This document shows positions 7,994 through 28,300 of a stretch of 64,000 bases of DNA, piece by piece. This DNA comes from Macrostomum lignano (Eukaryota): positions 558,001-622,000 of the forward strand of contig NIVC01000052.1 in the NCBI GenBank assembly GCA_002269645.1. Reading direction: 5' to 3'. The position numbers and the translations under genes were made by a program. Position 1 is the stretch's first letter. Each line of letters starts with the position of its first letter. The notes beneath the pieces were generated by a model. The model did not search any database and had not been told where the DNA came from. It was given only the letters and a program-made list of their open reading frames with translations.

Positions 7994-8694
7994 ATGTCGG
8001 ACCGCTATGGAGACTGTGCAGCGCCTGCTTTTGATAAGTCCGGAAAACGTGGGGTAAGTGCAGGCTCTGAAGCGCGCTGTTTAGAAGCTTAACTGGCTGA
8101 GTTGAATGAGGTGGGTGATTGGAGCGAGGTGGGTGATTGGACCGAAGTGGGCGATTGGAGTGAGGCAGTGATTGGAGTGAGGTGGGTGACGGGAGTGAGG
8201 TGGGTGACGGGATTGAGGTGGGTGACGGGAGTGGGGAGTGACGGGAGTGAGGTGGGTGACGGGAGTGAGGTGGGTGACGGGAGTGAGGTGGGTGACGGGA
8301 GTGAGGTGGGTGACGGGAGTGAGGTTGGTGACGGGAGTGAGGTGGGTGATGGAAGTGAGGTGGCAGACTGTGACTATTACTCAACTTCCCACAACACAAA
8401 CCCGTTGCTCAGACCGGACTGTGGCTCGCGGCCAAGGCCAGGGTGCGCCAGATTTACTACCAGTACCTGCTGATAACGGCGGCCTCCGCTCTGGAGCCAA
8501 TAGAGGTTGCCGTGTTCAACTCGCTAATGCTGCTGCTTGCCGGCCTCTGCTGCTTCTACGGTTGCACCATGGCTGCGCACTGCTTTGCCTGGAGTGCATC
8601 CTTCCTGCCCGACAAGTGGCAGCAGTTGCTGCCCGATTGGCTTCAGTCAGGCGTCAGCACCCACGCGGCAAGGGTGGGCAGTGGTGAACTTTAG
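7994..8694 (+). CDS. SPTSSA: Serine palmitoyltransferase small subunit (ssSPT/SPTSS family), 2 exons (7994-8053, 8413-8694), 113 aa
   Basis: IYYQYLLITAASALEPIEVAVFNS aligns with the human SPTSSA motif FYYQYLLVTALYMLEPWERTVFNS. Exon 1 ends GGG|GTAAGT and exon 2 starts CAG|ACC, phase 0, in frame. The A versus B paralog assignment is not resolvable. Confidence 0.85.
8105..8362. repeat. 18-bp minisatellite GTGAGGTGGGTGACGGGA filling the SPTSS intron
   Basis: Tandem units. The same unit family recurs at about 41965-42160. Confidence 0.9.
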
Positions 8695-10430: not shown

Positions 10431-11719
10431 ATTACCAAGCCAATGAATACAAAGCATTGAAGGTGGGCGCCATAGCACAATGGATATATAACTGCCAGTC
10501 TGTGCAATACAGTTCTGTCTTAATATTTAATTGATTCTGTTAAAACTCGTTGATTCGAACGCGCATCTGGCGGCTTGATGGGTTCACTCCGGTCACAGCT
10601 GCCCTGCGACATTAAGTGCCACTATATCACAGATCGAATGCAAAAATGGTTAGTAAAATATAACTGCGGCTCAATACGCAGACAGACAATCTCACTGATA
10701 AAAAACCCGAATCAGCCAGCAGGCAGGTGGCAGATTCGCATCATAAATAGCAATTATATTCAATAAAATAATATGGAGAATAAAAATAGGTGACATTTTC
10801 CGACAGACACTACCGACAGTAGACAAAAAAGCGACGGCATGCAAAGGAATTAAAATAACATTTAATAAACTGACTAGACTAAAGCATTGAGATCAAATTG
10901 TGATTATTAATAATAAAATAATTACGATATTAATACTATTGATAGATAGAGTCATAAAGAAAGCAATAGTTGAGAAAAATGCTTAAAACTACTGACAAAC
11001 TTTAGTAGTGTGCAGCGCGTTGTGAGAGACAAAAAATCTGTGAATAATTATTTGGGCTCGAGATTCTTTTTAAAACAGAAATGACCATCGAGTCCAGGTG
11101 CTAATAGCAGTAGCCCATGCATAGCAGTCCTTGCTCTGGCTAGCCGTACGCAACCTGGACTCGATGGAAAATTGATAGATGAAGATTTTCCGGCAGGGTT
11201 CAAAATAAGCATAATATTTACACGCAAAAGCATAGAAATGAACAGGAGCAATAATTAGCATTAGAAGTAATAAATCATACATTATTATTATTATCATTAT
11301 TATTAGTTAGAGTTCAGATCGCGACAATGGAACGCATTAATATTTAATAGACAGCAGATCTGGCTGAGTGGCCACTCCCATGATTACTTTCAGACGCCTA
11401 CTTATAGTAGTCTGTATGCTTTCTGAAAGAGTTAATTAAGTGTACTGAAGAACTCTAAAACTGCATCCCTCAGCCAGGTCTGCTAAATTGCTGGTTTAGG
11501 ACAAAATCAGTAATTAACAAGCGCTAGTGCCGTGTGTTCTTTCGGCACAGTGTTGTGGCGAATTTGTTTAAAAAGCTGAATCTACGAACCTCCTAATGGC
11601 AGGTCAGCGAGTTCTGAAGCATTTGAACACAGCAACAAGATGACAGATGACTGACTCCATGGCCTCAACTCCCATTGCAATTATATTAGCTTACGGATGT
11701 AGCGAACACACAGCAGTTA

Positions 11720-12385
11720 ACCCCATAGCAACTAACGTCATAGCAACCAACATCATAGTAACCAACTGCATAGCAACCAGCTGCATAGCAATAAACCCAT
11801 AGAAATTAAAACCATAGCAACTAGCTTTATAGCAACCAACGCCATAGCAACCAACGCCAAAGCAACCAACTCAGCAGCAAACGCCATAGCAACCAACCCA
11901 TAGCAACTAAATTCATACCAACCAACTCCATAGCAACCAACTCCATAGCAAACAACTTCATAGCAACCAATGCCGTAGCAACCAACTCTATAGCAACCAA
12001 TGCCATAGCAACCAACGCCATAGCAACCAACGCCAAAGCAACCAACTCAGCAGCAAACGCCATAGCAACCAACCCATAGCAACTAAATTCATACCAACCA
12101 ACTCCATAGCAACCAACTCCATAGCAAACAACTTCATAGCAACCAATGCCGTAGCAACCAACTCTATAGCAACCAATGCCATAGCAACCAACGCCATAGT
12201 AACCAATGTCATAGCAACCAACTCCATAGCAACCAATGGCATAGCAACCAACTCAGCAGCAAACGCCATAGCAACCAAGCCATAGCAACAAAATTCATAC
12301 CAACCAACTACATAGCAACCAATGCCCTAGCAACCAACTCCATAGCAACCAACGCTATGCAACCAACGTTATAGCAACCAATCCC
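11720..12385. repeat. 15-bp minisatellite ATAGCAACCAACGCC with about 176-bp higher-order unit
   Basis: Tandem units just downstream of the PIP4K-like stop codon. The diagnostic variant TCAGCAGCAAACGCC recurs at 11871 and 12047. Confidence 0.92.
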
Positions 12386-12406
12386 AAAGCCTAGAAGAAG
12401 CAATCG

Positions 12407-15400
12407 CTACTGCATGCTGGCCTCTATGAACTCCAGAAAGCGGCGCGCGTAGACCTCGGGCCGGACTGTGCTCAGCTGATTCTCACTACTCGATCCGTGC
12501 TTCATTGATTTGTAGGTCTGGGCGGTCCGCTTACGCACGCCGTACTTGGTGAGTATGCTGATGATGCTGATAAAGTACACGCACTGGCCGCTAGCCGAGG
12601 TCACCGCGAAACTCTCTTCCGATGGGGCGACGAGTGCGGCCTCTTCTTCGTCGTCATCGTCGCCGGCTGACACCGTGGCGCCGGCGGCCGCGGCGGCGGC
12701 CTCTTCAGCTTCGCTATCAGCACCGTCAGCGTCGGCCTCGCCAGCTTCGTCCAGATCGCAGGGAGCCCCGTCGACTGCCTGACCAGATGAGGTTGGGGTG
12801 ACGAGAGGCGTTGAGAGAGTTGATGAGAGACAACAGACAACAGACACGCATACAAAAGACACGCATACAAAACACGCGCATACAAAAGACACGCATACAA
12901 AAGACGCGCATACAAAAGACGCGCATACAAAAGACACGCATACAAAAGACACGCATACAAAACACGCGCATACAAAAGACACGCATACAAAAGACGCGCA
13001 TACAAAAGACGCGCATACAAAAGACACGCATACAAAAGACACGCATACAAAACACGCGCATACAAAAGACACGCATACAAAACACGCGCATACAAAAGAC
13101 ACGCATACAAAACACGCGCATACAAAAGACACGCATACAAAAGACGCGCATACAAAAGACGCGCATACAAAAGACGCGCATACAAAAGACACGCATACAA
13201 AACACGCGCATACAAAAGACACGCATACAAAACACGCGCATACAAAAGACACGCATACAAAAGACGCGCATACAAAAGACGCGCATACAAAAGACGCGCA
13301 TACAAAAGACGCGCATACAAAAGACGCGCATACAAAAGACACGCATACAAAAGACACGCATACAAAACACGCGCATACAAAAGACGCGCATACAAAACAC
13401 GCGCATACAAAAGACACGCATACAAAAGACGCGCATACAAAAGACGCGCATACAAAAGACACGCATACAAAAGACACGCATACAAAACACGCGCATACAA
13501 AAGACGCGCATACAAAAGACGCGCATACAAAAGACGCGCATACAAAAGACGCGCATACAAAAGACGCGCATACAAAAGACGCGCATACAAAAGACGCGCA
13601 GGAAGCAGACGCGTTTAAAGCAGAGGCGCACAGACCTCGTCTTCCCCCAGCCGGGACCGATCGTGTACCCCAACCAGCAGCGAATAGTCCATGAGGTTCT
13701 CGCGTTGAAGGAAATCGACATCGGCCCGCAGCGTGGACATCAGACGGGCTTTCTCGGCCGGGCCAACCTCGATGCACTCGCGGGCGGTGACAAAGTCGAC
13801 ATCCTTGTAGGTTGGCAGCTCTTTGCTGCGCTCCTTTTCGCTGGCCTCGCGGTCGATGGTGCTGCCTTTCAGGTCGTACTTGCGGTGGATTTTGTAGCGC
13901 GGGTTGAACACACACCTGATAGACAGGGGGTCAAGTTTGAAAAGTTTGAAACTTGGGTGTCAGAAGGGGTGTCAGCAGACACTTGGGTGTCAGAAGAGGT
14001 GTCAAGACACTTAGGTGTCAGAAGAGGTGTCAGAAGACACTTGGATATCAGGATAGGTCTCAGAAGACACTTGGATGTAAGGAGAGGTGTCAGGAGAAGT
14101 GTCAGAAGACACTTGGGTATCAGGAAGGGTGTCAGAAGACATTTGGATGTCAGGAGAAGTGTCAGAAGACATTTGGATGTCAGGAGAAGTGTCAGAAGAC
14201 ATTTGAATGTCAGGAGAAGTGTTAGAAGACACTTGAATATCAGGAGAGGTGTCAGAAGACACTTGAATATCAGGAGAGGTGTCAGAAGACACTTGGGTAT
14301 CAGGAGAGGTGTCAGAAGACACTTGGGTGTCAGGAGAGGTGTCAGAAGACACTTGGGTATCAGGAGAGGTGTCAGAAGACACTTGGGTATCAGGAGAGGT
14401 GTCAGAAGACACTTGGGTATCAGGAGAGGTGTCAGAAGACACTTGGGTGTCAGGACAAGACAGGAGAGGGTGTCGCGTTCTTTGGTGCATGCATGCTAGT
14501 GGAGTGGTTAACTCTATTATCGATTTTTATTATTAGCCTATAACCACCCTCTCCGTCAGTCTTTTCCTATGTACGCACTTGTGAGGGCGGCTACGTACTT
14601 GTAGACTGCCCAGCTAGACAGCAAATATAAATCAGTCAGGAGGCCACTGGCCCGAGCACCTTGCTCATTCTTAATTGTTATTTTTACAATATGGCGCCCG
14701 AATGAAAAAATATTCTATTTTACCTTAGCGGCTTTCTAACAAGCGACTTCAGTTAAGGCTACGACTGCAAGAATCGCTTTACTCTAACGCTGCAAGCCAC
14801 GGCTGGTTCGCATTCTGGAGCAGTAGCATCTGCCTGTCCTGACGATGAGCAGCGGCCGCGGCTGGATATTACTAGATCAGCGTGCTTCCTTCACTCACTA
14901 TTGAGAATTTCGCTAAGTTCAATTAAAGTTAATTTCTGTTTGTTCTGTTATTACGGTTGCTTATTTTTCGGTTTCTCTGATTCCGTGTTGATTGCCTCTG
15001 TTTTTTCATGCTTCTTGCCTTTAATTAGTTGTAATATTTCGTGTTTCTTCTTTGTTTCTGGTTTGAGCTGGTCGACTCGCTCTGCTCATTGGCGCCGGGG
15101 TTTTCTTGCATTCTTTGCTCCTTCCGGTCGTCCGTCATGGTTCTCAGTGGAGATGAGCTGGCTGCAGCTGTTCGGAAACGGGCAGGAATCCGTTCGGCGA
15201 TTACAAAAGCTATAGCTAAGGCTGAGGAAACTCTGCTAGGTGGTCCAGGAAGAGTGTTCAACCGGATAGAAGCTGCTACGTATATCGACATCCTTAGTCC
15301 TAAGCTGGAAGCTTTGCATCAATTGGATGAGGTTATTGAGGAGTCTGTTGAGGAAGACCAGCTGGACAGGGAACAGGAAGAGAATCAGACTTACTCATTG

Positions 15401-18400
15401 AGATGCATTAGTTGCATCAAGAAGTTGACTGAAGCCGTTCAACGGCATGAAAACTTTGCCGCTGCGGCGAATTCGGCTACAGGTACACCTGGCCTTGTCT
15501 CTACGCAGGTAAAGCTTCCAAAGAGACAGCTCCCGATTTTCACGGGGGAGATTGCAACGTGGCAGTCTTTCTGGGATCAGTTTGAGTCATCGGTCCATAA
15601 GAGCTCCACGCTTGCAGATATCGACAAGTTCAATTATCTCCTAAGTGCTCTATCAGACTCTGTCAAATCATGCATTAGGGGGCTTTCTGTAACGTCTTTA
15701 AATTATGGTATAGCTGTTGAAATTCTAACAGAGCGTTATGGCAAGTCTGAAGTTATTGTCAGAGATTTAATGCACCGGATCTCTGAGCTGCGCTTGCAGG
15801 ACACCTCATTGAGGTGCCTGCAGCAGTTTCACGATGATATCTCGGCTAACATGCGGAGTCTAGAATCCCAGGGGGTCTATGCTAGCTCCTATCAATCTCT
15901 TCTAGTTCCAACATTACTGGGGAGATGCCCGGCGAGTTTTCGCCTCGATCTGCTTCGAGCGGCTCAGCTTCAGGGTGGAAGCATTTCCACGCTCGGTAGT
16001 TTTTTGCAGCTGCTGAAAAGCGAAATAGAAGTGCGTGAGAGTGCTGGAAATCATTGGGGTGCAAAATCAAGTTCTCAACACGGTTCGAACACTGACTCAA
16101 AGTCGACGCCAAAGACTCCAATGTCGATGGCATCCACCTTGGTGGTGGTGCCACCGAAGGCTGCCGAGTCCGATTCGAAACACTCTTGCCCCTATTGCAA
16201 AGAGTCGCACTCGCCAGAGAGCTGCAATCGGGTTTCGACAGTCAAGGAAAGACGTGAATGCTTAGCCAGCGAGCAGCGTTGTTTTCGATGCTTGCGGCAA
16301 GGGCATAGGGTCCCGAAGTGTCGCGATCCCATAAGGTGCCAAATCTGCTCAGGTAGGCATCACGTCAGTCTCTGCTTTCAGAGTAACTCGCACAGCCAGC
16401 CAACAGGCAAAGCTAACAAGGCCAAGGCAGAGCCTACACAGCCACGCCAGAAACAAGTCACGATTCCACGCAATCAATGTCTTACCGCAGCGGCTCCTGA
16501 TGTTCCGCAGCTTCAGGACGGCACGGAATCGAGGATCGCGGAGGCAAACTCACCGCAAGAGTTGGCCAGAATGGACAGTGACGGTTCGGTTGTCATGTCC
16601 ATGTTTATATCGGGAAATCCATCAGTGGCGCTGCCAGTGGCCAAGGCTATCCTTATCAGTTCAGATGGCCGCAAAGAAATGATGGTGCGCCTTCTCCTCG
16701 ACACTGCCAGTAACCGAAGCTACATCCGGCAGGATGTGTGTGAGGCTATGGGTCTCGGAGCTGCTTCCACAGAGACGTTATGCGTGTCCACTTTCGCGGG
16801 ATTGAACACAACAATACAGTCTGGGAGTGTTGGGTTCTCAATTCGGAAAGTTGATTCATTTGAGGTCATTGATCTGAAAGCCAATGTGGTGAAAACCATT
16901 TGCCAACCTCAGCGTTCAGTCAGGATGAATGAGTTTGAGCACCTGCGCTCTCTTGATCTTGCAGATCCGTTTGATACGCGCGATGGGAGCACTCCGATTT
17001 CAATCTTGATTGGCTCGGACTTTTACTATCAGATAGTTGGTGATGAGATTATTCGTGGACTTCACGGCCCGGTCGCTATCTCTTCGAAGCTAGGCTATCT
17101 TCTGTGTGGGCCGCTGACAGTAAATACTCGGAGTCGCGTCGATGGCTTGGATGAGGGTCAGTCGGTCAGCGAAGGAGCCTGCACCAGCACGCCGGTGGTG
17201 TGCTGCTTTGCCAGTGGCGGCTCGGATTTGGTGGTTGCCGACAGCCAGGATTTCACGGCACTGTGGAGGCTGGATTCGATAGGAATTCTTGACGATCCGC
17301 GACCTGCTGCGGCGGAAGATTTTCCATGCAATGCGCAGCTTCGCGAGGGTCGCTATTCGGTGCAGTTGCCGTGGGCCTATGCCAAAGAGGCGATTGAATT
17401 ACGGGATCACTTTGATCTGGCAGCACATCGGTTAAGGTCCAGTATGCGCCATTTAGAGCGCAATCCAGCTAAGTTGGCTCAGTGTGATGGAATCCTCGCC
17501 GAGCAGGAAAATCTGGGTATTATAGAGAAGGTCCCAACCACTGAAAGCGCCCAGCCAGCTGCAATCATTCATTACCTACCGCACAGTTGCGTCTCAAAGT
17601 CAGATAGCGAGCATACAAAGCTTCGCATGGTTTTCGATGGATCCGCAAAGGCAAACAGTACCGACTTCTCGATTAATGATTTTCTGCTGACGGGACCAGC
17701 AACATTTCCGCTGATTCCCCAGCTGCTTGTCCGGTTCCGCCTCAAGCCAATTGCTGTGCTGGCGGACATTGAGAAGGCATTTCTGCAAATCGGCATCGAT
17801 CCAATCGACCGCGACGCACTTCGATTTCTTTGGACTCAAGGTCGCATTGGGGAACCGCGGCAAGTCGTGCAATACAGATTCTGTAGAGTTCCGTTCGGTC
17901 TTTCATGCTCGCCTAGCATTCTGCAGGCCACGATTTCGCAGCATCTTGAGCTGCTTCAAAAACGTTTTCCGGAAGTTGTGGGAACTCTCAAGCACAGCTT
18001 GTACGTTGACAATTTAGTCACTTGCTGCGACTCGCCTAGTGAGGCGGTAGAGTTTTACACTCAGACGAAACAGATTTTCGCCATGGCTGGCATGAACATG
18101 CGGCAGTGGCAGTCCAACTCGAAAGAGTTTATGAAGGTTCTACCTGCTGCGGACGTAGGGAGCGCCCAGAAGGTTCTTGGCATTCCATGGGAGGCTGGAG
18201 GGGACATTTTTCGCCTAGAATTTTCGGAAATGCTAAACTCCGTCGGCGATGAAATTCCGTCGAAGAGACTCATGCTTGCGGTTTTAGCCAGGGTTTTTGA
18301 TCCCCTTGGGTTCATGACTCCCGCCATTGTAATGGTTAAGGCTTGGTTTCAGCAGCTCTGCAAGGAGAAAGTTCAGTGGGACGACCGCCTTCCCCTGGGT

Positions 18401-21400
18401 ATCGCTACACAGTGGGTGGGGTGGCTGAGCTCGCTGAGAGTCACTTGTCTGGAAATTCCACGGTGTGTCATTCCTCGGGAAGCGGACACGCACCTTTGTA
18501 AACTGCAGCTTCACGGGTTTTCCGATGCCAGTGAACGGGCATATGCAGCGGTTGTGTATCTGCGGGTTGTGGATACAAGGCACCACAGTGTTTCAACTCA
18601 CCTGCTGATCGCAAAATCTAGGGTAGCTCCGCTGGTACCCGTTAGTATCTCCAGACTCGAACTTCTTGGAGCCTTGATATTATCTCGGTTGATAAGCTTC
18701 GTATCTATACAGCTTCCCGGGGTTCAGCGGTTCCGGTGGACCGACAGTTCGAATACTTTGCAGTGGATAAAGTGCGAGTCAAAGCTGCGCCAAGTATTCG
18801 TTCAGAACCGGGTTACAGAAATACGGCGATTAACCGACGTCAGCGAGTGGCGGCACATTCCCGGAGCTGTCAATCCCGCGGATCTTCCATCGCGGGGGTG
18901 CTTGCCGAACAGGCTGATGGAGAACGCGTTGTGGCTGAACGGGCCAGAGTTTCTTCGTCAAGTGGGAAGCAGTTTCAGTGACACCTTCGATTTTCCAGGC
19001 AAGCCATCGTCCACGGCAGAGTCACAAAACGACTGTGAAATGCTGCAAGCCGATTATGAATCTCGGGTGGAGACTCAGAAGTCACGTGGGGAGGCTCTAG
19101 CTATGCCCTCAGTTGGCTCACAGGTGCGCGAGCGCGCAAGAGCAGGCACGCTGCTCAAGGTTTTTGATATCCAGCGTTTCTCTTCGTGGATCAGGATGAC
19201 GCGCGTGCTCGGTTGGGTTCATCGCTTTGTTCGCAATGCGCGCAGATCTGCGGCGGAACGAAGGTTAGATGATCCGTCTGATTTGTCAGCCATCGAAGTT
19301 CAGGAAGCGGAGAATTCCTTGTTGCGAGCAGTGCAAGCTTCCGCGTTAGATCCTGAAATTCAGCATCTTCAGGGTGCTGGGCATCGCACGGCCTTGATCC
19401 GTGACTTGAACTTGGTTCTCGGTGAGGACGGTCTTGTTCGATCGGGTGGTCGTCTTCAGGATGCGGTGCCATTCGAAACGAACAACCCAGTCTTAATCCC
19501 ACCGAAACATCCGATTGAGCAGCTGCTTATCCGCCACTGCCACAGCGCAGTTTTCCATGGTGGTGTTCCTGCGACGTTGTGCAAAATCAGAGAGCGGTTC
19601 TGGATTTTAAAGGCCAGACAGCGCGTCAGGCAGGTTTTAGCAGGTTGTGTGACATGTAAGATGCTTCAAGGATGTCCATTTTCGGTGCGGTCAGTTCCGC
19701 AACTTCCCCGGTTTCGGTTGTCCAGCATTCGGGCGTTTCAGACAGTTGGCCTTGATTATGCTGGTCCGATCATATATCGGACGGGGGAGGGTGCGGGAGA
19801 GAACAAGAAGTCCTATGTTCTTCTTTTCACATGCTCTGCAACTAGGGCAGTTCATTTAGAGGTCGTGAGAAGCATGGATTGTGATCAAATGCTACACGCC
19901 CTTAGGCGTTTTGTTGCTCGAAGAGGGATACCATCTGTAGTCAGTGACAACGCACGCACCTTTCGAGCCGGAGCTAAATTAATTGGTGCGCAAATTTCCG
20001 AAGACTTGCAGGCGTTTTGTTCATCCAGGAAGATCAGCTGGCATTTCATTCCTGAGCGAGCCCCGTGGTGGGGAGGTTTCTGGGAGAGGCTCATTGGATT
20101 AGTGAAGATGTCACTTAAGAAAGCAGCAAAACGTCAACTCCTAGACTTTGATCAGTTAGTGACTCTGGTGCTTGAGACCGAAGCAGTGGTGAACTGTCGG
20201 CCGCTGCTGTATGTGTCATCTGATGACAGCACCGAGGTTATCACACCGTCGCACTTTATTGCAGCCGGACGACTCACTCAAGAATCTGGCGGGGTTGAGA
20301 ATGATGGTGAGTCGTTGCTGCCACTTCCAAGAAGATTAAAGATGCTCAGAGCTGCACTAGATTGGTTTTGGCACCAGTGGAAAACAGCCTATCTTCAGGC
20401 GCTTCGTGAAAAAGCTTTGAAGGACCATCCTGAAGGTCGTGTGCCACGTGTCGGTGAAATGGTTCTGCTCGTTGGAGAAGTCCACCAGCCGAGGCTGAGG
20501 TGGAGGCTTGGTTTGGTTGAAGAGATTCGCGTTGGCCGTGACGGGGCAGTCCGTTCGGCGGTCGTCCGAGTGTCGGGTGCTGGGAATTCCCGGCGCTGGG
20601 AGCGGGTGAGGAGACCAGTTCAAGCTTTGGTGCCGCTAGAGATTCAGTCTTAAGTCATTTTTTGTTCGCTGTTCAGCTCGTTTTTCGCGTTTGGCTTCGC
20701 TACTGAATTTTCAACTTTCGTCGTTATATCGATAGTCTGTTTGGTTGATTTGGTTGATTATGTTAAATTGCGTTGTTTTTTTCTGCGTTGCGTTTGGCGT
20801 TTTTTGAGTTTTTGCAATTCTCGTCATTTTTTGCGGTAATTGGGTTTCATTTTCCATCCCGTTTCGAATTGACATATTATAGTAAAGTCCAAATTAGTTT
20901 ATCCGCTTTTTCCTTGAGAATCGTTCGTTTCGGTTATTGTTAAATTTAATTAATTTCACTCAAATATCTCATTTCAATTGATTTCACCATAGTTACACCA
21001 AATATACGAGTATTTTCAAAATTGGTGTTAATATTCGAAGGTTAATTTCTGAGAAAAATGCTTCCCATTTTTGGGGGAGTGTCGCGTTCTTTGGTGCATG
21101 CATGCTAGTGGAGTGGTTAACTCTATTATCGATTTTTATTATTAGCCTATAACCACCCTCTCCGTCAGTCTTTTCCTATGTACGCACTTGTGAGGGCGGC
21201 TACGTACTTGTAGACTGCCCAGCTAGACAGCAAATATAAATCAGTCAGGAGGCCACTGGCCCGAGCACCTTGCTCATTCTTAATTGTTATTTTTACAATA
21301 GAGGGCATTTTGGTGTCAGAGAAGTACATTTTGAGAGTGAAGCAAGAGCGAGGGAGAGCAGTTCATTGAGATTAGATAGTGAAGAAGTCTTCAAACGAAT

Positions 21401-24400
21401 CCAACATGTCTGTCTCCCAGGAAATCCATCGCGAAACACCTCTGCCGAGCACGCACAGCGGGACAGGGTTGCTAAGCCGGGAATCCACTGCCTCGCCATC
21501 CTAGTAAGCGGAGAAGTGCCAGCACGGATTATCCAAGTGGGGATCAGGATCAGATATGGGAATATCCGCATGACTGCCCACGGTAGAGAGAGACAGGGGG
21601 GAGAATTTTATTTTCAGCCTGGTAGCAGGGCCGATGCCGCGCGGCTTGAAGTCAGCTTCTTCAAGGAGGAAATGAAATATTGCAGCGGAAGGCCTGGAGG
21701 AGCGCGGGGAGTGGAATTGGGAAATGACAAAATGGAGCATCGGGAGAGGAGCGGAGGGGGGAGAGAGGATTGGGTCGATGCTCGCAGGGGGGGGGGCAGG
21801 CATCTCTGGTCTCCAGCTGAGACCGGGAACCTCAGCATCCGAAAGCAATCAACGGCGAGCTTAAAGCAGAAAAGAAGCAATTTGCAAAGCAAAATTTAGC
21901 AGAAAGGTGGGGACGCACAGGTGCAACTAATTCGCCTGAATGGGACAGCAGACAACAAATAGATTCTGAAGAGCATCTCCTCAAAAAATGGACTGCTTCT
22001 ATTAAATATTTTACATTGGCTGACAAATGACCGATCATGATAGACTTGAGCTGCCTCTGATCAGGGGGAGGCATGAAGGAGATCAGCGACCAGTTTGGAC
22101 ACAAATTAATGATGGATGAGTCCAACGTGGAGAGAAGCCGAGTGTAGGGGAGAAGGCCGGGAATGAGTGGCTCAGTCGGCTGACAGCTCGAGGGACGGAC
22201 TCGAAAATGAAGTCGATATAGCGGGGGAGAGAGAGTAGAGGCGGGAAAGAGAGAAGGGGTTGGGGCCGTCGGTTCAGTTGGCTTCGAGTGCACTTGGCAG
22301 ATGCGAGTGCTGCTCACTTCACTGCTCAATTCGGATTTTAATTGGCGAAAGAAATTCGATTTGTATTTGCACACCGATTGACATAGAGCTCAGGGCTGGG
22401 GTCATTGCACACGCGGCCCAGGCTCGATTCCAAGGAATCTCGGTTTGGCTCTGCTCATGCAATTAACGCCTTTGAGCGCCAGCCCACAAGGCAACATCGC
22501 AATGCCTTGTGGCGCAATACAAGCGCACCAATACTCACACACACGCTCACAAAGGGTGTAAAGCGGCCCCGACTTTCTAATCGTTAGGCATGTACCCACT
22601 TTGTGCCTTGGGGGTGTTGGACCTCATGGCTGCGAAAGACGCAACAACCCTACGGCCAAGCGAGTTTTACACACTTGCAGCTTCCATATTGTCCGGTGTT
22701 GAACTTTTCTATTGGGAAGCAGCTCACCGCATCATGAGCAGGTAGTAGTCGGTGTCCTCAACAGTAGCCCTGTACATAGCCAGGTACTGAGGCAGCAGGG
22801 TGGCGGCTGAGCATTCGACAATATATCCGTGATAGGCTTGCAGCACCTGGTGCACCTGTTCCACCTCCTCGCAGGTGATCAGGCGGAGCACGTATCGCCG
22901 ATTTTGGGTGCACAGGAAGCGAGCATCAGCCCGACCGAGCGAGCTGTCCCAGTGCGGCTGGCGCTTCGTCCAGCTGGACAGCAGGTCGGCGGAGTCCGCC
23001 ACGCCGAACTTGGCGCGCAGGTCGGCGAACACTAGCGGGCAGTACTCCTTGAACTGGAAGCGGCTGGGCATGTTGTCTCTGGGAGGTTGGAAAAATCGTT
23101 TGGATTCGTTTTCATTAAAATTCGTTAAAAATTAGAAAGTAGAAGAATCTATACCAATATTCAGTTGGATGATATTTGATCGATTGGAAACTGAAAAGTG
23201 CGCACTGATTGACGAAGTCTTTGTCCAGCCTCCTCCTCACTCATCCCCTTCCCTGTCTCCTCTCCTTTTCCCTCTCTTTTTCTCTGTCTTCTCTCTAGCT
23301 CCCTTTCCTTAATCCTTTCCTGTCTCCCCCTTTCTCACCTTCCCTGTCTCCCTCTCTCCCCTTCCCTGTCTCCCCCTCTCACCTTCCCTGTCTCCCTCTC
23401 TCCCCTTCCCTGTCTCCCCCACTTACCTTCCATGTCTCCCTCTCTCACCTTCCCTGTCTCCCCCTCTCTCACTTTCCCTGTCCCCTGTCTCCCCCTCTCT
23501 CACCTTCCGTCTCCCCCTCTCTCACCTTCCGTCTCCCCCTCTCTCACCTTCCGTCTCCCCCTCTCTCACCTTCCCTGTCCCCTGTCTCCCCCTCTCTCAC
23601 CTTCCGTCTCCCCCTCTCTCACCTTCCCTGTCCCCTGTCTCCCCCTCTCTCACCTTCCGTCTCCCCCTCTCTCACTTTCCCTGTCCCCTGTCTCCCCCTC
23701 TCTCACCTTCCCTGTCTCCCCCTCTCTCACTTTCCCTGTCCCCTGTCTCCCCCTCTCTCACTTTCCCTGTCTCCCCCTCTCTCACCTTCCGTCTCCCCCT
23801 CTCTCACCTTCCGTCTCCCCCTCTCTCACCTTCCGTCTCCCCCTCTCTCACCTTCCCTGTCCCCTGTCTCCCCCTCTCTCACCTTCCGTCTCCCCCTCTC
23901 TCACCTTCCCTGTCCCCTGTCTCCCCCTCTCTCACCTTCCCTGTCCCCTGTCTCCCCCTCTCTCACCTTCCGTCTCCCCCTCTCTCACCTTCCCTGTCCC
24001 CTGTCTCCCCCTCTCTCACCTTCCGTCTCCCCCTCTCTCACTTTCCCTGTCCCCTGTCTCCCCTCTCTCACCTTCTCTGTCTCCCCCTCTCTCACTTTCC
24101 CTGTCCCCTGTCTCCCCCTCTCTCACTTTCCCTGTCTCCCCCTCTCTCACCTTCCGTCTCCCCCTCTCTCACCTTCCGTCTCCCCCTCTCTCACCTTCCG
24201 TCTCCCCCTCTCTCACCTTCCCTGTCCCCTGTCTCCCCCTCTCTCACCTTCCCTGTCCCCTGTCTCCCCCTCTCTCACCTTCCGTCTCCCCCTCTCTCAC
24301 CTTCCCTGTCCCCTGTCTCCCCCTCTCTCACCTTCCGTCTCCCCCTCTCTCACTTTCCCTGTCCCCTGTCTCCCCCTCTCTCACCTTCTCTGTCTCCCCC

Positions 24401-25822
24401 TCTCTCACTTTCCCTGTCCCCTGTCTCCCCCTCTCTCACTTTCCCTGTCTCCCCCTCTCTCACTTTCCCTGTCCCCCGTGTCTCCCCCTCTCACCTTCCC
24501 TGTCTCCCCCTCTCTCACTTTCCCTGTCCCTCGTGTCTCCCCCCTCTCACCTTCCCTGTCTCCCCCTCTCTCACTTTCCCTGTCCCCCGTGTCTCCCCCC
24601 TCTCACCTTCTCTGTCTCCCCCTCTCTCCTGGCTCTCCTGCCCTGCCCTATCTTGTTGTCCCTCCCTCATCGTTATTAACTACTATAAATTCCCCCTTCG
24701 CTTTTCCTCTATTATCATCACATTTTCCTGCAGTGCAACTCTGTCTCATTCATTCCTACCCTAGCAACCAGCATAACCTGACAATTTAGCTACTGATAGA
24801 ATTGCGACGCAGAGCATTCAATGGCGGTAAAATTACTCACCTCCCACTATAGAAGGCAGACCTGCCGATTACTTTACCTGCCCCCTAGAGGAGTAAACAG
24901 CAGCTCCATGCTAAGCATTGCGTGCTGACACAGGCGGCTCATCTCAGATTAACAACAGCGTAAATCCGGCTCACCTGGCTGCATCTGCTACAGCTTAAAG
25001 TCTCTCAGCTGTTTCTCTGACTCTCTCTCTCTCTCTCTCTCTCTCGTCTCAAAGCTAATTAAACGACCGTTTCTCAGTTCATCTACACAGAGCCAACAGA
25101 TTAAATTGATAATTCATCAAGCTTACTGGAAGGAAGCTGCGTGATTGTAATTAACCTGAACTGAACAGGAAACCTGACTGATTGAATGCAAAACTTTTGC
25201 ATACAAAGAAATCGAAGTCGAAGGCCATTAAGCTTATAAAGGCACTCACTTGTTAAACAGATGGTTGTCGACCTTGACCTTCAGATAGCTCTTGAAATCG
25301 TCAGGCAGCAGCATTGTGCGCTTATTCACATGGTTCAGCTGCTCGAACTGGAAGTTGGTGCCAGGTTGTGGTATTGGTCACGTGATGCACTGTTTGGAAA
25401 TCTGGCTAGGGAATTATTAAAGACACATTCTCGCTTCTCTCGATCTCCAAACATTCTCCCGACCCGCTCCCTTCCTCTCCCTCTCCATTTCTCTCCTCTC
25501 ATTCGCTCCCTTCCTCTCCCCCCTCCGCTCCCTTCCTCTCTCCTCCCCCTCCCTTCCTCTCTCCTCCCCCGCTCCCTTCCTCTCCCTCTCCCCCGCTCCC
25601 TTCCCCTCTCTCTCTCTCACCGCTCCCTTCCTCTCCCTCTCTCCCCGCTTGCTTCCTCTCCATCTTCCTGTCCACTACCTTGATATAATTATTCTGGAAG
25701 GTACTTACAGAGTAGCTGATGCCCCACATTATAACTGACTTCAGCGGTTCATTTGCTCGAAATAATTTCAGCTTCTGGCGAACTCCCTTCACTTTGCGAC
25801 TCTTCTTCACGTGAATGTCCAT
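12407..25822 (-). CDS. PIP4K2: PIP4K2-family (phosphatidylinositol-5-phosphate 4-kinase-like) protein, 5 coding exons (25822-25709, 25347-25250, 23078-22728, 13915-13636, 12778-12407), about 404 aa; catalytic residues substituted
   Basis: Contains [76 protein letters not shown] and STVRPEVYARRFLEFI, colinear with PIP4K2A/B. All introns are GT-AG and phases 0/2/2/0 give one open frame. An upstream exon is possible. Confidence 0.93.
12845..13598. repeat. 15-bp minisatellite GCATACAAAA(G/C)AC(A/G)C filling PIP4K intron 4
   Basis: About 50 tandem units. The intron is 857 bp (not a multiple of 3), so the long ORFs over it are artefacts. Confidence 0.95.
13950..14460. repeat. 30-bp minisatellite GTCAGAAGACACTTGGGTATCAGGAGAGGT
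   Basis: Tandem units. The BEL/Pao element is inserted at its edge, with a related remnant after 21305. Confidence 0.92.
14471..14691 (+). repeat. 5' LTR (TGT...AATA)
   Basis: Direct repeat of 21080-21300, followed by the PBS. Confidence 0.95.
14692..14702 (+). promoter_or_regulatory. Primer-binding site TGGCGCCCGAA (tRNA-Lys-like)
   Basis: Immediately 3' of the 5' LTR. 11-nt match to the known Lys-tRNA PBS start TGGCGCCCGAAC. Confidence 0.75.
15137..20653 (+). CDS. BEL/Pao gag-pol polyprotein (about 1838 aa from the first ATG)
   Basis: Domains in order: DUF1759-like LPKRQLPIFTGEIATWQSFWDQF; three CCHC-type knuckles; protease LLDTASNRSY; RT LADIEKAFLQ...FGLSCSP...YVDN; RNase H LHGFSDASERAYAAVVY; integrase H-H-C-C, GLDYAGP, SDNARTF, WGGFWERL. 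The PR-RT-RH-IN order is as expected for BEL/Pao. Confidence 0.97.
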   Translation: MVLSGDELAAAVRKRAGIRSAITKAIAKAEETLLGGPGRVFNRIEAATYIDILSPKLEALHQLDEVIEESVEEDQLDREQEENQTYSLRCISCIKKLTEAVQRHENFAAAANSATGTPGLVSTQVKLPKRQLPIFTGEIATWQSFWDQFESSVHKSSTLADIDKFNYLLSALSDSVKSCIRGLSVTSLNYGIAVEILTERYGKSEVIVRDLMHRISELRLQDTSLRCLQQFHDDISANMRSLESQGVYASSYQSLLVPTLLGRCPASFRLDLLRAAQLQGGSISTLGSFLQLLKSEIEVRESAGNHWGAKSSSQHGSNTDSKSTPKTPMSMASTLVVVPPKAAESDSKHSCPYCKESHSPESCNRVSTVKERRECLASEQRCFRCLRQGHRVPKCRDPIRCQICSGRHHVSLCFQSNSHSQPTGKANKAKAEPTQPRQKQVTIPRNQCLTAAAPDVPQLQDGTESRIAEANSPQELARMDSDGSVVMSMFISGNPSVALPVAKAILISSDGRKEMMVRLLLDTASNRSYIRQDVCEAMGLGAASTETLCVSTFAGLNTTIQSGSVGFSIRKVDSFEVIDLKANVVKTICQPQRSVRMNEFEHLRSLDLADPFDTRDGSTPISILIGSDFYYQIVGDEIIRGLHGPVAISSKLGYLLCGPLTVNTRSRVDGLDEGQSVSEGACTSTPVVCCFASGGSDLVVADSQDFTALWRLDSIGILDDPRPAAAEDFPCNAQLREGRYSVQLPWAYAKEAIELRDHFDLAAHRLRSSMRHLERNPAKLAQCDGILAEQENLGIIEKVPTTESAQPAAIIHYLPHSCVSKSDSEHTKLRMVFDGSAKANSTDFSINDFLLTGPATFPLIPQLLVRFRLKPIAVLADIEKAFLQIGIDPIDRDALRFLWTQGRIGEPRQVVQYRFCRVPFGLSCSPSILQATISQHLELLQKRFPEVVGTLKHSLYVDNLVTCCDSPSEAVEFYTQTKQIFAMAGMNMRQWQSNSKEFMKVLPAADVGSAQKVLGIPWEAGGDIFRLEFSEMLNSVGDEIPSKRLMLAVLARVFDPLGFMTPAIVMVKAWFQQLCKEKVQWDDRLPLGIATQWVGWLSSLRVTCLEIPRCVIPREADTHLCKLQLHGFSDASERAYAAVVYLRVVDTRHHSVSTHLLIAKSRVAPLVPVSISRLELLGALILSRLISFVSIQLPGVQRFRWTDSSNTLQWIKCESKLRQVFVQNRVTEIRRLTDVSEWRHIPGAVNPADLPSRGCLPNRLMENALWLNGPEFLRQVGSSFSDTFDFPGKPSSTAESQNDCEMLQADYESRVETQKSRGEALAMPSVGSQVRERARAGTLLKVFDIQRFSSWIRMTRVLGWVHRFVRNARRSAAERRLDDPSDLSAIEVQEAENSLLRAVQASALDPEIQHLQGAGHRTALIRDLNLVLGEDGLVRSGGRLQDAVPFETNNPVLIPPKHPIEQLLIRHCHSAVFHGGVPATLCKIRERFWILKARQRVRQVLAGCVTCKMLQGCPFSVRSVPQLPRFRLSSIRAFQTVGLDYAGPIIYRTGEGAGENKKSYVLLFTCSATRAVHLEVVRSMDCDQMLHALRRFVARRGIPSVVSDNARTFRAGAKLIGAQISEDLQAFCSSRKISWHFIPERAPWWGGFWERLIGLVKMSLKKAAKRQLLDFDQLVTLVLETEAVVNCRPLLYVSSDDSTEVITPSHFIAAGRLTQESGGVENDGESLLPLPRRLKMLRAALDWFWHQWKTAYLQALREKALKDHPEGRVPRVGEMVLLVGEVHQPRLRWRLGLVEEIRVGRDGAVRSAVVRVSGAGNSRRWERVRRPVQALVPLEIQS
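21073..21079 (+). promoter_or_regulatory. Polypurine tract GGGGGAG
   Basis: Directly 5' of the 3' LTR. Confidence 0.7.
21080..21300 (+). repeat. 3' LTR
   Basis: Direct repeat of 14471-14691. Confidence 0.95.
22417..22657. mobile_element. Diverged, internally inverted relative of SINE family A
   Basis: About 22417-22483 matches the SINE-A B-box region on + (CCAGGCTCGATTCCAAG...TGCAATTAACGCCTTTGAG). About 22530-22615 matches the SINE-A body on - (CCCCAAGGC...GTACATGCCTAACGA...GGGCCGCT.TACAC). Confidence 0.6.
23280..24640. repeat. CT-rich minisatellite (CTCTCTCACCTTCCCTGTCCCC variants) in PIP4K intron 2
   Basis: Pyrimidine-rich + strand with 21-28 bp units. ORF 23432..24679 is an artefact. 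Confidence 0.93.
25440..25670. repeat. CT-rich low-complexity repeat in PIP4K intron 1
   Basis: CGCTCCCTTCCTCTC-like units. Confidence 0.8.
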
Positions 25823-28300
25823 TTCATGCGGCCCTGGCTGCAATGCTTAATTCACTACTGTCTGGAGAGGACAGGCTGCTTGTTAACTGGTTGCACAGAG
25901 TGGTAGCCTAGCCCAAGGCTTGCCAAGTTGGTTGCAGACCTAGAAATTTAGAAAAAATAAAAACAAGTAAGAAACAGTTAATACTGATGTTAGTCTTTTA
26001 ACTGAGAAATAGAAAATCTCTAGCTTTTACAAATTAAAGTTAGGTATTTGATAATAATATAAAATATGAGTTTTAAGGACTATCAAAATATTTAAAAGAA
26101 TGATAGATTCAAATTACTTCTATTTTATTAATACATATGGAAAATATAATTATTCAAATAGATTTAAAAACTTTTTTGAATACTATAATTTATTTTAACC
26201 AGATTTTTTAAATTGATCTGCTTTAAACCAAAAGTAGCATTGTACCTGAAATCGTTATATAAAATATATTTAAATTAAGGCTTTAATTCAGTAAATCGTC
26301 TAACAATTAATAAATATTTAACCATTGAAACTTGAAAACAAATGAAAATTCAAAACTACATATTTAGAGCTAACTATACTCCCTTAGTTAGCCCACACTC
26401 ATAAAAGCCTAGAAAAGAAAATAAAAGAGAAAAACTAAACTTGTGATAATTTGAGGACTATCATTTTTGGACCAGCGATAAGGAGCACAATTAAATTGCA
26501 AAAAGTAAATATATGCTAACACTAACAGAATGATATTATATTTTAAAAAGTTTGTTCTCGTATCATAGAAAGTCGACAATGACAATTTAGTAACTTGAAT
26601 ATATTGGCAGGACGAGTAAAAATTAACTTCGATGTCTAAATGAGAAAAAAATGCTTATGCCTCAAAACTAAAAAAATCGGAAACTCTGTTTAAGTGAATA
26701 TTGATCTTCTTTCAGCTCCTTTTTCGACTATGTCATATTAGAAAAACTAGGTGAAGTGAAGTGAAGTTCTTTCGTTGGCTTTGTTGATGTAAATTGCGAT
26801 CATTTGAGTATTTTCGTGGTTTCTATGAATTTTTTATTTCGCTTTATTGTACGTAAAAAAAATTATAGAAAACGAAAGCTTTTCATGATTTTAATAGAAT
26901 TTTATATTTTTGAAAGGGAAAAAATAAGACAATACAGTTTTCTGTTACCAGAAGTTGCTTGCTTTTGTTATAGCTAATGCCAACTTTGGCACTGCCACTC
27001 TAACGGACTGCCTCATCGCTGACTTGCAGGCGCTTGAGCTGACCCCTCAGGCTGCTGCAACCTGCCCCTCTCGCCTGCTCTGCGAGCGCGTGCGCGCAAG
27101 GGGCCTCCCGTCGGCTTTTAATGAATTTATGATTTTAATCGATAAATGATTTTCATCGCGTCGAGGTTTCGTTCGACAACGATTAAGGCTGTGTATGCTT
27201 TGGAAAGCTTTGAAACTTTGGAAACTTAATGAAAACTGGTTGTCCTAAAATATAATGGGTCAGTTGGTTTTAGCTAAATTTCGCATAATTGAACAATATC
27301 GAACAGTTAAACGCTTAGTTATTGAACGATAATTATACGAAGATGAGGCTGCACCATGCAGTCTCTATTTATTTAAAGTTTACCAAAGCATAAAATAAAT
27401 TTTCAATCGGTATTAGAATGTTAGAATTTTATTTATACTAAGATTTGTTTTGTTTTTCATTCTTATTTTTCATAAAAATTCAATATGTTTATGAAAAATG
27501 CATACACACACAGTACAACTCTGGCGTTAAAAGACCGCCCAATTAACGCATTCAAAAATACAAAAAAGTACGGAATTCGATTACGCTCTAAAATAAAATA
27601 CTATGAAGTTGTACATAATGCATAAAGTTTTGCATAGATCTTAAATTTAATCTGATCATACAGTCGAACTTCGTACACGTGCGGATGTAAGCCTAAATAT
27701 ACGAGCATATAAATGTTTCTGAATATTTGCTTCTCTTATATCTAACGAAAGCAATTGGATCTCAGCACAGCAAAAAAGTGTGCATGTCTCTGAGGTCTAC
27801 AATAGGGAGAAAATTCGTGAAGTGTCTTTACCAACCTTGAAATAATTTTTGTACGAAGTTCAGCATATTTCTCTGAAAATATATCGATGCAGTGCGCTTC
27901 TTTATTTGAATGAAAACTTCATTTCAAGGTTCATCGAGCGATGCCAAACTGGCCTAGCGAGGAAATCTTGGCTAAATGAACGGCTCCAACTCCCAAAGGT
28001 ACTCTGCAAAAGCAAAAACGAAAAAGTAATAACTGCTGAAGTCGAATATATTCGAGCTCACTGTTGCGGTGATATCGCTTCAGACTTTTCCAGAGCTCCT
28101 TTATCGCCTCTGAGCCACACACGCTCAATCGTTCTCCCACACTTTCTTAAAAAAATTTCGAACCTGGATCGGTGGGTGTGCACTCGATCACCCCATTGGA
28201 TTCCGAATCCAAGCTGGAGAAGAATATAAGGGTTGGGGAAAAATTAATGAAACGGAGCTCAATTCTGCTCGGTTCGTTCCCGCTATAGCTCGAAGAAAAA

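What the first reader, a model, noticed from the sequence alone, without database searches (positions are those of the whole stretch)
12407..25822. PIP4K paralog that looks like a conserved pseudokinase
Seen: an intact, phase-consistent reading frame of about 404 aa with three active-site changes. The ATP-binding Lys (human RYIIKT) is Arg in RYVLRL (codon 22885-22883). The metal-binding Asp of the IID motif (DFG equivalent) is Ser in FISIISILTKY (codon 12559-12557). The G-loop RSGARF reads RADARF. DLKGS, MDYSLL and the N-terminal dimer-interface strand (SVIMWG) are retained. Known: this Lys and Asp are required for PIPK catalysis, and PIP4Ks also have catalysis-independent roles such as dimerisation and restraint of PIP5K. 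Inference: a lineage-specific catalytically dead PIP4K kept as a scaffold or regulator. The multi-nucleotide codon changes and absence of stops argue against sequencing error or neutral decay.
Basis: partly seen in the sequence, partly recalled or inferred. Interest (0 to 1): 0.8.

Follow-up and report, generated by a model that had tools for sequence, protein, structure and literature searches.

The report
Catalytically dead PIP4K paralog in flatworm
A flatworm (Macrostomum lignano) keeps an expressed copy of the lipid kinase PIP4K that has lost the residues needed to use ATP but is still protected by natural selection, so it most likely works as a non-enzymatic regulator or partner protein.

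Summary
On the minus strand, five GT-AG exons (25822-12407) encode a 404-aa type II PIP kinase. It is 100% identical to Macrostomum lignano BOX15_Mlig026968g1, a gene model built from RNA-seq transcripts. The IIK lysine is Arg (CGC, 22885-22883), the IID aspartate is Ser (AGC, 12559-12557), and the G-loop reads GRADARF.

- A second genomic copy (g2) carries the same lesions. The two copies differ by 11 synonymous and 2 non-synonymous changes (omega about 0.05, p = 4e-6).
- The genome also holds a canonical paralog A (K, D and G-loop intact) and a paralog B that lacks the G-loop. All three arose within the Macrostomum lineage, and this gene (C) is sister to A.
- C evolves about 1.5 times faster than A. 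Its unusual substitutions cluster around the nucleotide pocket, while DLKGS, MDYSLL, the activation loop, strand beta1 and the PIP5K-inhibitory TMLLPDD motif are kept.

Best reading: a true PIP4K pseudokinase maintained for a non-catalytic role, either dimer partner or PIP5K restraint. That role is inferred, not shown. No ortholog from another species was available. Similar lesions occur independently in Priapulus, acanthocephalan and choanoflagellate PIP4K-like proteins. I rate it a new variant of a known kind, of moderate interest.

The parts
25709..25822 (-). Exon 1. ATG at 25822-25820; encodes aa 1-38, including helix alpha1 with SVIMWG.
   Evidence: GT donor at 25708. Identical to the N-terminus of P0001.
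25823..25837 (-). Short 5'UTR segment just after an AG acceptor (25839-25838). Older transcript-derived models join an upstream exon (about 28823) at this point. It contains an out-of-frame upstream ATG at 25827-25825.
   Evidence: P0002 and P0125 read ...VEV|PGPHEMDIH, while the genomic reading is ...ALQPGPHE.
25250..25347 (-). Exon 2, aa 39-71. Contains TMLLPDD (25317-25297), the counterpart of the VML-phi-PDD motif that mediates PIP5K inhibition, and strand beta1 (YLKVKVD).
   Evidence: The role of the motif comes from PMC6619495.
22728..23078 (-). Exon 3, aa 71-188. Contains the G-loop GRADARF (22936-22916) and RYVLRL, where Arg replaces the IIK Lys (codon 22885-22883).
22883..22885 (-). 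Codon CGC = Arg136, at the position of the ATP-binding Lys (PIP4K2A K145, equivalent to PKA K72).
   Evidence: PMC4570271.
13636..13915 (-). Exon 4, aa 188-281. Contains DLKGS (13875-13861) and MDYSLL (13692-13675), both intact.
12407..12778 (-). Exon 5, aa 282-404 plus the stop codon (12409-12407). Encodes an acidic disordered insert that lacks the PPDSP motif, FISIISILTKY with Ser in place of the IID Asp, the activation loop RKRTAQTYKSMKHG, and the C-terminal helix.
12557..12559 (-). Codon AGC = Ser355, at the position of the metal-binding Asp of IID (PIP4K2A D359, equivalent to PKA D184).
   Evidence: PMC4570271.

Best explanation
This is gene Mlig026968 (copy g1) of the flatworm Macrostomum lignano. 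It is an expressed, selectively maintained paralog of phosphatidylinositol-5-phosphate 4-kinase that has become a true pseudokinase.

**Origin and lesions.** It arose by an old duplication within the Macrostomum lineage, from the ancestor it shares with the canonical paralog A. It then lost the IIK lysine (now Arg), the IID metal-binding aspartate (now Ser) and the G-loop Ser-Gly (now Ala-Asp). It therefore most likely cannot bind or position Mg-nucleotide, or transfer phosphate.

**What it keeps.**
- The PIPK fold.
- The lipid-headgroup elements: DLKGS, MDYSLL and a type II activation loop.
- Strand beta1, through which PIP4Ks dimerise.
- The TMLLPDD motif, through which PIP4Ks bind and inhibit PIP5K.

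**Inferred mechanism (not shown).** It homodimerises, or heterodimerises with active paralog A. At PI(4,5)P2- or PI5P-containing membranes it then acts without catalysis, either restraining PIP5K or modulating or targeting the active PIP4K.
For: **Shown here**
- Intact 5-exon ORF, identical to an RNA-derived GenBank gene model.
- PIP4K identity by Pfam and PDB sequence search.
- AlphaFold model with pLDDT 80 and pTM 0.79; TM-score 0.91-0.94 (normalised by target length) to PIP4K2A/B/C crystal structures.
- Lesions at columns that are K or D in 117 of 118 other PIP4Ks.
- The same lesions in the second copy g2; 11 synonymous against 2 non-synonymous differences, omega 0.05, p = 4e-6; both replacements fall in the disordered acidic insert.
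- dS to paralogs A and B is saturated (1.7-2.3) with dN of 0.21-0.27.
- C evolves only about 1.4-2.4 times faster than A.
- Clade A+B+C has 100% bootstrap support and A+C has 92%.
- C departs from the family at 17 of 124 columns that are at least 90% conserved, against 5 for A. Its unique changes cluster at residues 132-140, 186/192 and 352/355, around the nucleotide pocket.
- No alternative exon restores the motifs.

**From the literature**
- The IIK Lys, MDYSL Asp and IID Asp correspond to PKA K72, D166 and D184 (PMC4570271).
- The G-loop sets PI5P4K activity, dimerisation runs along the beta1 sheet, and isoforms form true heterodimers (PMC3749867).
- Kinase-dead PIP4Ks still inhibit PIP5K, through VML-phi-PDD (PMC6619495; PMC10482388).
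Against: - No enzymatic, nucleotide-binding or interaction data exist.
- Some kinases that lack canonical residues remain active (CASK and WNK, from general knowledge).
- MDYSLL and DLKGS are intact, so a residual or altered activity cannot be excluded.
- RNA evidence is indirect. It rests on how the annotation was built, and reads cannot be assigned between copies g1 and g2, which are 99% identical. Copy g1 carries a young retrotransposon in intron 3.
- No ortholog from another Macrostomum species was available, so how long the dead state has been conserved is inferred only from codon paths and the g1/g2 comparison.
- TMLLPDD differs from the vertebrate motif at its first residue. This difference is shared by all three paralogs.
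Confidence: 0.72

Rival explanations
1. The protein is still an active lipid kinase with a non-canonical active site. Arg would substitute for Lys and metal binding would be rearranged. The substrate, phosphate donor or metal requirement might have changed.
For: MDYSLL (catalytic Asp), DLKGS and the activation loop are intact. Strong purifying selection is equally compatible with an enzyme. Atypical kinases without canonical residues are known (general knowledge).
Against: Three separate nucleotide-site elements are hit together: G-loop G to D, IIK K to R, and IID D to S. No acidic or Lys replacement lies nearby. The Lys and Asp columns are essentially invariant across PIP4Ks. Extra C-specific changes cluster in strand beta3 and the hinge, which looks like relaxation of the pocket rather than preservation.
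Confidence: 0.1
2. This is a decaying or transcribed-but-useless duplicate (unitary pseudogene in progress) in a highly duplicated genome, with no function of its own.
For: M. lignano has massive recent duplication, with 180 Mb in blocks at least 95% identical (PMC5730564). This copy has repeat-expanded introns and a fresh LTR-retrotransposon insertion. An older-assembly model (P0263) reads through frameshifts.
Against: The ORF is intact in two loci. Differences between them are 11 synonymous to 2 non-synonymous, omega 0.05. Synonymous divergence from A and B is saturated, yet 86% of family-conserved columns are retained (107 of 124). The Arg codon CGC is three steps from AAA, so a long time has passed since the lesion without any ORF decay. 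The gene model is transcript-based.
Confidence: 0.06
3. It is a dead subunit whose main role is as a dominant-negative or targeting partner of active PIP4K paralog A through heterodimers, rather than a regulator of PIP5K. This is a sub-variant of the best explanation.
For: Strand beta1 is nearly identical between C and A: SYLKVKVDNHLF against SNLKVKVDNHLF. Mammalian isoforms heterodimerise along beta1, and mixing with kinase-dead alpha lowers activity (PMC3749867).
Against: Nothing here distinguishes this role from PIP5K restraint, and both could hold. No co-expression data were found.
Confidence: 0.35

Closest known systems
Mammalian PIP4K2C (PI5P4K-gamma)
   Same: Both are low- or no-activity type II PIPK paralogs that coexist with active isoforms. 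PIP4K2C heterodimerises with them and suppresses PIP5K independently of catalysis (PMC3749867, PMC6619495, PMC10482388). It has the same fold as this protein (TM-score about 0.9).
   Different: PIP4K2C keeps all catalytic residues and has near-normal intrinsic ATPase activity (PMC3749867). The flatworm protein has lost the Lys, the Asp and the G-loop Gly. The two arose by independent duplications: the flatworm A/B/C clade is monophyletic.
Engineered kinase-dead PIP4K2A/2B/2C and dPIP4K D271A
   Same: These are point-mutated dead enzymes that still lower PI(4,5)P2 and inhibit PIP5K. They are a functional model for what this protein could do.
   Different: They are laboratory constructs, usually mutated at the MDYSLL Asp, which is intact in this protein. 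The dead dPIP4K does not rescue growth phenotypes in flies (PMC6379509).
PIPKH / PIP5KL1
   Same: It is a natural PIPK-family protein regarded as a pseudokinase. It associates with active PIP5K-alpha and -beta (PMC6794296).
   Different: It is related to type I PIP5K and is found in vertebrates. It is not a PIP4K and lacks the VML-phi-PDD and type II features.
M. lignano paralogs A (Mlig022740) and B (Mlig027118/028634)
   Same: They come from the same lineage-specific expansion. The first three intron positions and a 2-residue insertion before LSTV are shared, and the proteins are 58-62% identical to C.
   Different: A is fully canonical. B keeps the Lys and Asp but has a 5-residue G-loop deletion inside a contiguous exon. 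Only C lacks the Lys and the Asp.
Other database PIP4K-like proteins with the same sites mutated
   Same: Several database proteins carry changes at the same sites:
- Priapulus caudatus XP_014666782: K to T and D to Q.
- Neoechinorhynchus agilis KAL7674365: K to R, D to K, and no G-loop.
- Pomphorhynchus laevis KAI0981163: K to R.
- The choanoflagellate Didymoeca costata: K to Q and D to K.
   Different: They belong to unrelated lineages, so the losses are independent. None is characterised, some may be imperfect gene models, and I found no paper describing them.

Membership tests
Type II PIP kinase (PIP4K / PI5P4K) | PIPK catalytic-domain fold and sequence (Pfam PF01504) | tested here: met
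   E = 4e-66, covering profile positions 11-286 of 288. The AlphaFold model matches PIP4K2A/B/C crystal structures with TM-score 0.91-0.94.
Type II PIP kinase (PIP4K / PI5P4K) | Closer to type II than to type I or type III PIPKs | tested here: met
   E-values are 1e-107 to 1e-95 for PIP4K2A/B/C, 2e-33 for PIP5K1A and 3e-8 for PIKfyve. In the tree it nests inside flatworm PIP4Ks.
Type II PIP kinase (PIP4K / PI5P4K) | DLKGS and MDYSLL motifs | tested here: met
   Present at aa 202-206 and 263-268. The Asp columns of both motifs are invariant across the family.
Type II PIP kinase (PIP4K / PI5P4K) | ATP-binding Lys of the IIK motif | tested here: not met
   The residue is Arg136 (CGC), in both genomic copies. 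The column is K in 117 of 118 other PIP4Ks.
Type II PIP kinase (PIP4K / PI5P4K) | Metal-binding Asp of the IID motif | tested here: not met
   The residue is Ser355 (AGC), in both copies. The column is D in 117 of 118.
Type II PIP kinase (PIP4K / PI5P4K) | PI5P 4-kinase activity | not testable with these tools
   This needs a recombinant enzyme assay.
Pseudokinase (pseudoenzyme) of the PIPK family | Kinase fold retained, but one or more essential catalytic residues lost | tested here: met
Pseudokinase (pseudoenzyme) of the PIPK family | Maintained by purifying selection after the loss | tested here: met
   g1 against g2: 11 synonymous and 2 non-synonymous differences, omega 0.05, p = 4e-6. The test covers two copies within one species only; it was not possible across species.
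Pseudokinase (pseudoenzyme) of the PIPK family | Expressed as mRNA or protein | tested here: inconclusive
   The gene model comes from an RNA-seq-only annotation pipeline (PMC5730564), and older transcript-derived UniProt models exist. I saw no read-level or protein data, and three supplement searches found nothing.
Catalysis-independent PIP5K-inhibiting PIP4K | N-terminal VML-phi-PDD motif | tested here: met
   TMLLPDD at aa 49-55. It matches the motif at 6 of 7 positions, and the V to T change is shared by all three M. lignano paralogs. Motif defined in PMC6619495.
Catalysis-independent PIP5K-inhibiting PIP4K | Physical binding and inhibition of PIP5K; dimerisation | not testable with these tools
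   This needs pull-down and in vitro PIP5K assays.

The most novel reading that the evidence does not exclude
Dead PIP4K paralogs have evolved repeatedly and independently across Holozoa: Macrostomum, Priapulus, acanthocephalans and choanoflagellates. The reason would be that the non-catalytic job of PIP4K is ancient, separable from catalysis and selectable on its own. That job would be sensing PI(4,5)P2 or PI5P and restraining PIP5K, or partnering an active subunit. Macrostomum lignano has RNAi and transgenesis, so it would be a natural system to study that function with no kinase activity in the background.
Probability: 0.3. Interest if true: 0.65.

Novelty: new variant of a known kind. Interest (0 to 1): 0.5.

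Why it matters
The PIP4K field is debating how much of the knockout phenotypes, and hence of the drug-target rationale, comes from catalysis and how much from scaffolding (PMC12276927, PMC6619495, PMC10482388). So far the non-catalytic role rests on engineered kinase-dead mutants and on PIP4K2C, which still has its catalytic residues.

A naturally occurring PIP4K under purifying selection that has lost its nucleotide site but kept the dimer strand, the lipid-binding elements and the PIP5K-inhibitory motif would be independent evolutionary evidence. It would show that the non-catalytic function alone is worth keeping. It would also show which surfaces that function needs.

The practical impact is modest. 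This is a lineage-specific paralog in a genome full of duplicates, and pseudokinases are common in other kinase families.

Tried and rejected
1. **Orthologs in other species.**
   - The full-length search found nothing closer than 47-50% identity outside M. lignano.
   - A 210-aa core-fragment search returned only shorter proteins at 60% identity or less, and did not even list the M. lignano proteins.
   - An exhaustive search of 1.84 billion representatives gave one hit at 81% identity, P0263. It is a frameshifted model of the same gene from an older assembly, not an ortholog.
   - Cross-species dN/dS was therefore impossible.
2. **Expression data.** Searching for Mlig026968 in full text and in the supplements of three M. 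lignano transcriptome papers found nothing.
3. **Alternative exon restoring IIK or IID.** tblastn of paralogs A and B and an outgroup against the whole window returned only the five known exons. Rejected.
4. **Sequencing error.** Rejected, because the second locus and older models agree and the codon changes are multi-nucleotide.
5. **dN/dS between paralogs.** dS is saturated (1.7-2.7), so these ratios are only rough upper-level indicators.
6. **G-loop change as evidence of inactivity by itself.** Weakened. The Gly is replaced in aphids (N) and in one otherwise canonical sequence (D).
7. **Rfam and tRNA scans of the window.** Nothing found.
8. **Clustering of C-specific substitutions near the nucleotide pocket.** The segments were chosen after seeing the data, so I offer this as description, not as a test.
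Full report
**What is in the sequence.**
On the minus strand between 25822 and 12407, five exons with canonical GT-AG introns join into a 1215-nt ORF of 404 aa. The exons are 25822-25709, 25347-25250, 23078-22728, 13915-13636 and 12778-12407. Arg136 in RYVLRL is codon CGC at 22885-22883. Ser355 in FISIISILTKY is codon AGC at 12559-12557. The G-loop reads GRADARF (22936-22916). DLKGS, MDYSLL and SVIMWG are present.

The protein is a clear type II PIP kinase. Pfam PIP5K gives E = 4e-66. Human PIP4K2A and PIP4K2B are the best solved relatives, at E = 1e-107 to 1e-105, against 2e-33 for type I PIP5K1A. An AlphaFold model (pLDDT 80, pTM 0.79) is disordered only at residues 1-7 and in the acidic insert 284-332. 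It superposes on PIP4K2A/B/C crystal structures with TM-score 0.91-0.94, normalised by target length.

**Whose gene it is.**
The translation is 100% identical to Macrostomum lignano BOX15_Mlig026968g1 (PAA92426.1). The window therefore comes from this free-living flatworm. The GenBank annotation of that assembly was produced only from RNA-seq and transcriptome assemblies (StringTie/TACO plus a de novo assembly, with low-expression novel transcripts discarded, then TransDecoder) (PMC5730564). The exon structure I derived from the DNA therefore coincides with a transcript-derived model. This is indirect but real evidence of transcription and splicing.

Older UniProt models (P0002, P0125, P0122) join upstream exons at 28.8-39 kb to an acceptor just before the ATG. 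Those exons belong to a CRAL_TRIO_2-domain gene. This fits the polycistronic precursor transcripts described for this species.

**How unusual the substitutions are.**
I aligned the protein with the other 118 top PIP4K hits, 116 of them from outside Macrostomum.
- The Lys column is K in 117. The one exception is R, in an unnamed lophotrochozoan-type sequence.
- The Asp column is D in 117. The one exception is a misaligned partial sequence.
- The G-loop Gly is less strict, at 108 of 118. Aphids have N, and one otherwise canonical protein has D.

The G-loop change alone would therefore prove little. According to the PIP5K1A structure paper, the IIK Lys, MDYSL Asp and IID Asp are the equivalents of PKA K72, D166 and D184 (PMC4570271). 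G-loop sequence largely sets PI5P4K activity (PMC3749867).

The codons differ from those of the paralogs by two or three nucleotides: AAA to CGC, GAC to AGC, GGC to GAT, ACN to CTG. No alternative exon encoding canonical motifs exists anywhere in the 64 kb.

**Paralogs and phylogeny.**
M. lignano has three PIP4K lineages.
- **A** (Mlig022740, P0003) is fully canonical: GRSGSKF, VIK and IID.
- **B** (Mlig027118/028634, P0004; three loci) keeps the Lys and Asp but lacks five G-loop residues. The deletion lies inside an uninterrupted exon.
- **C** is the gene studied here.

The first three intron positions are shared by all three, and later ones differ. In a neighbour-joining tree with 23 outgroup PIP4Ks, A+B+C are monophyletic within flatworms (100% bootstrap) and C is sister to A (92%). 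Terminal branch lengths are 0.12 for A, 0.18 for C and 0.22 for B. Synonymous divergence among the lineages is saturated (dS 1.7-2.7), while dN is 0.21-0.27. The duplications are therefore old and lineage-specific, and C descends from a canonical enzyme.

**Selection.**
A second genomic copy, g2 (L001, NIVC01000600), is collinear with this locus over more than 25 kb, at 93-96% identity in non-coding DNA. It has the same Arg, Ser and GRADARF. The two coding sequences differ at 13 sites: 11 synonymous and 2 non-synonymous. This gives dS 0.041, dN 0.0021 and omega 0.05. The binomial p against neutrality is 4e-6. Both replacements lie in the disordered acidic insert. Random sequencing errors would be mostly non-synonymous, so these are real differences filtered by selection acting after the catalytic residues had already been lost.

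Over the long term, C is only about 1.4-2.4 times faster than A in relative-rate tests, and about equal to B. C retains 107 of the 124 columns that are at least 90% conserved across PIP4Ks.

C and A have the same number of lineage-unique substitutions, 31 each. C's fall much more often on conserved positions, and they cluster in strand beta3 (H132R, I135L, K136R, T137L, S140C), the hinge (V186M, S192N) and the IID segment (G352S, D355S). This is the pattern expected if constraint was lifted on the nucleotide pocket only. I chose the segments after seeing the data, so I offer this as description rather than as a test.

**What is kept, and the likely mechanism.**
The retained elements are:
- DLKGS and MDYSLL.
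- The activation loop RKRTAQTYKSMKHG, with the small residue typical of type II enzymes.
- Strand beta1, which is almost identical to A: SYLKVKVDNHLF against SNLKVKVDNHLF.
- TMLLPDD.

PI5P4K isoforms dimerise along the beta1 sheet and form true heterodimers (PMC3749867). Kinase-dead PIP4Ks still bind and inhibit PIP5K through the VML-phi-PDD motif, and they lower plasma-membrane PI(4,5)P2 (PMC6619495; PMC10482388).

The best-supported reading is a nucleotide-dead subunit that dimerises, binds phosphoinositide membranes, and regulates PIP5K and/or the active paralog without catalysis. The dead state is a strong prediction from sequence. The scaffold role is an inference by analogy.

**Rivals.**
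- **Non-canonical active enzyme, about 0.1.** MDYSLL is intact, but three nucleotide-site elements are hit at once and there is no compensating residue.
- **Functionless decaying duplicate, about 0.06.** This is contradicted by the selection signal, the intact ORFs in two loci, and the time implied by the three-step Arg codon.

**Comparison with what is known, and novelty.**
PIP4K2C is the closest functional analogue, but it keeps its catalytic residues and its ATPase activity (PMC3749867). PIPKH/PIP5KL1 is a PIPK-family pseudokinase, but of the type I kind (PMC6794296). I found no paper describing a natural PIP4K pseudokinase.

Screening about 260 further PIP4K-like sequences from the fragment search and the exhaustive representative search showed that the same sites are also mutated in other proteins.
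- Priapulus caudatus XP_014666782: K to T and D to Q.
- The acanthocephalan Neoechinorhynchus agilis: K to R, D to K, and the G-loop lost.
- The acanthocephalan Pomphorhynchus laevis: K to R.
- The choanoflagellate Didymoeca costata: K to Q and D to K.

The Macrostomum case is therefore probably one instance of a recurrent, undescribed theme rather than a one-off. I rate it a new variant of a known kind, with interest about 0.5.

**Limits.**
- There are no read-level expression data.
- No ortholog from another species was found.
- There is no biochemistry.
- Copy g1 in this window carries a very young BEL/Pao retrotransposon in intron 3 and expanded intronic tandem repeats that g2 lacks. The expressed copy could therefore be mainly g2.

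Noticed in passing
window 14470-21300 (+), inside intron 3 of the PIP4K-like gene: A full-length BEL/Pao LTR retrotransposon, antisense to the gene. It has 222-bp LTRs that are 100% identical (14470-14691 and 21079-21300). Its 1870-aa Gag-Pol ORF (15041-20653) is uninterrupted and carries DUF1759, RVT_1, Peptidase_A17, Integrase_H2C2, rve and DUF5641. It is exactly absent from the second gene copy (L001), so the insertion is very recent.
   Followed up: yes
window 12837-13600 (intron 4): A 15-bp tandem repeat (ACAAAAGACGCGCAT) in about 51 copies fills nearly the whole of intron 4. In copy g2 the same intron is only 152 bp.
   Followed up: partly
window 23314-24628 (intron 2), 13951-14455 (intron 3), 11719-12390 (3' flank), 29097-31593 (upstream): Large minisatellite arrays surround and interrupt the gene: periods of 22-53 bp (CT-rich), 30/60 bp, 15/176 bp, and 32 bp in 77 copies. 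They create long spurious ORFs in several frames.
   Followed up: no
L003, L004, L005 (paralog B, Mlig027118/028634): A second divergent PIP4K paralog keeps the Lys and the Asp but lacks five G-loop residues (…DSSQ-----NMIWSC…). The deletion lies within a contiguous 333-nt exon and is identical in three loci, which differ by only 0 non-synonymous and 1-4 synonymous sites. It may be another low-activity subunit.
   Followed up: partly
window about 38316-42219 (-), upstream of the PIP4K-like gene: A gene with a divergent CRAL/TRIO (CRAL_TRIO_2) lipid-binding-type domain lies on the same strand. Older UniProt models (P0125, P0002) fuse its 3' part and intervening exons (28823-35227) to the PIP4K ORF. 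This suggests read-through or polycistronic transcription.
   Followed up: partly
window 8404-8490 (-), with a possible donor inside exon 5 near 12455: Two older models (P0122, P0125) replace the C-terminal helix VYARRFLEFIEASMQ with 29 aa encoded about 3.9 kb downstream (SGGR[R/S]YQQVLVVNLAHPGLGREPQSGLSN). This is either an alternative 3' isoform or a chimeric read-through.
   Followed up: partly
window 25827-25825 (-): An out-of-frame ATG lies 5 nt upstream of the start codon (ATGAAATGG) and opens a 6-codon uORF that overlaps the start. The main ATG has the better context (A at -3, G at +4).
   Followed up: no
proteins P0387, P0256, P0307, P0268, P0386, P0040 (not in the window): PIP4K-like proteins from Priapulus caudatus, two acanthocephalans, choanoflagellates and unnamed transcriptomes also lack the IIK Lys and/or the IID Asp. 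The bilaterian ones keep VML-phi-PDD.
   Followed up: partly
window 52711-53424 (-): An ORF with C2H2 zinc fingers (Pfam zf-C2H2, E = 2e-10); otherwise not examined.
   Followed up: no
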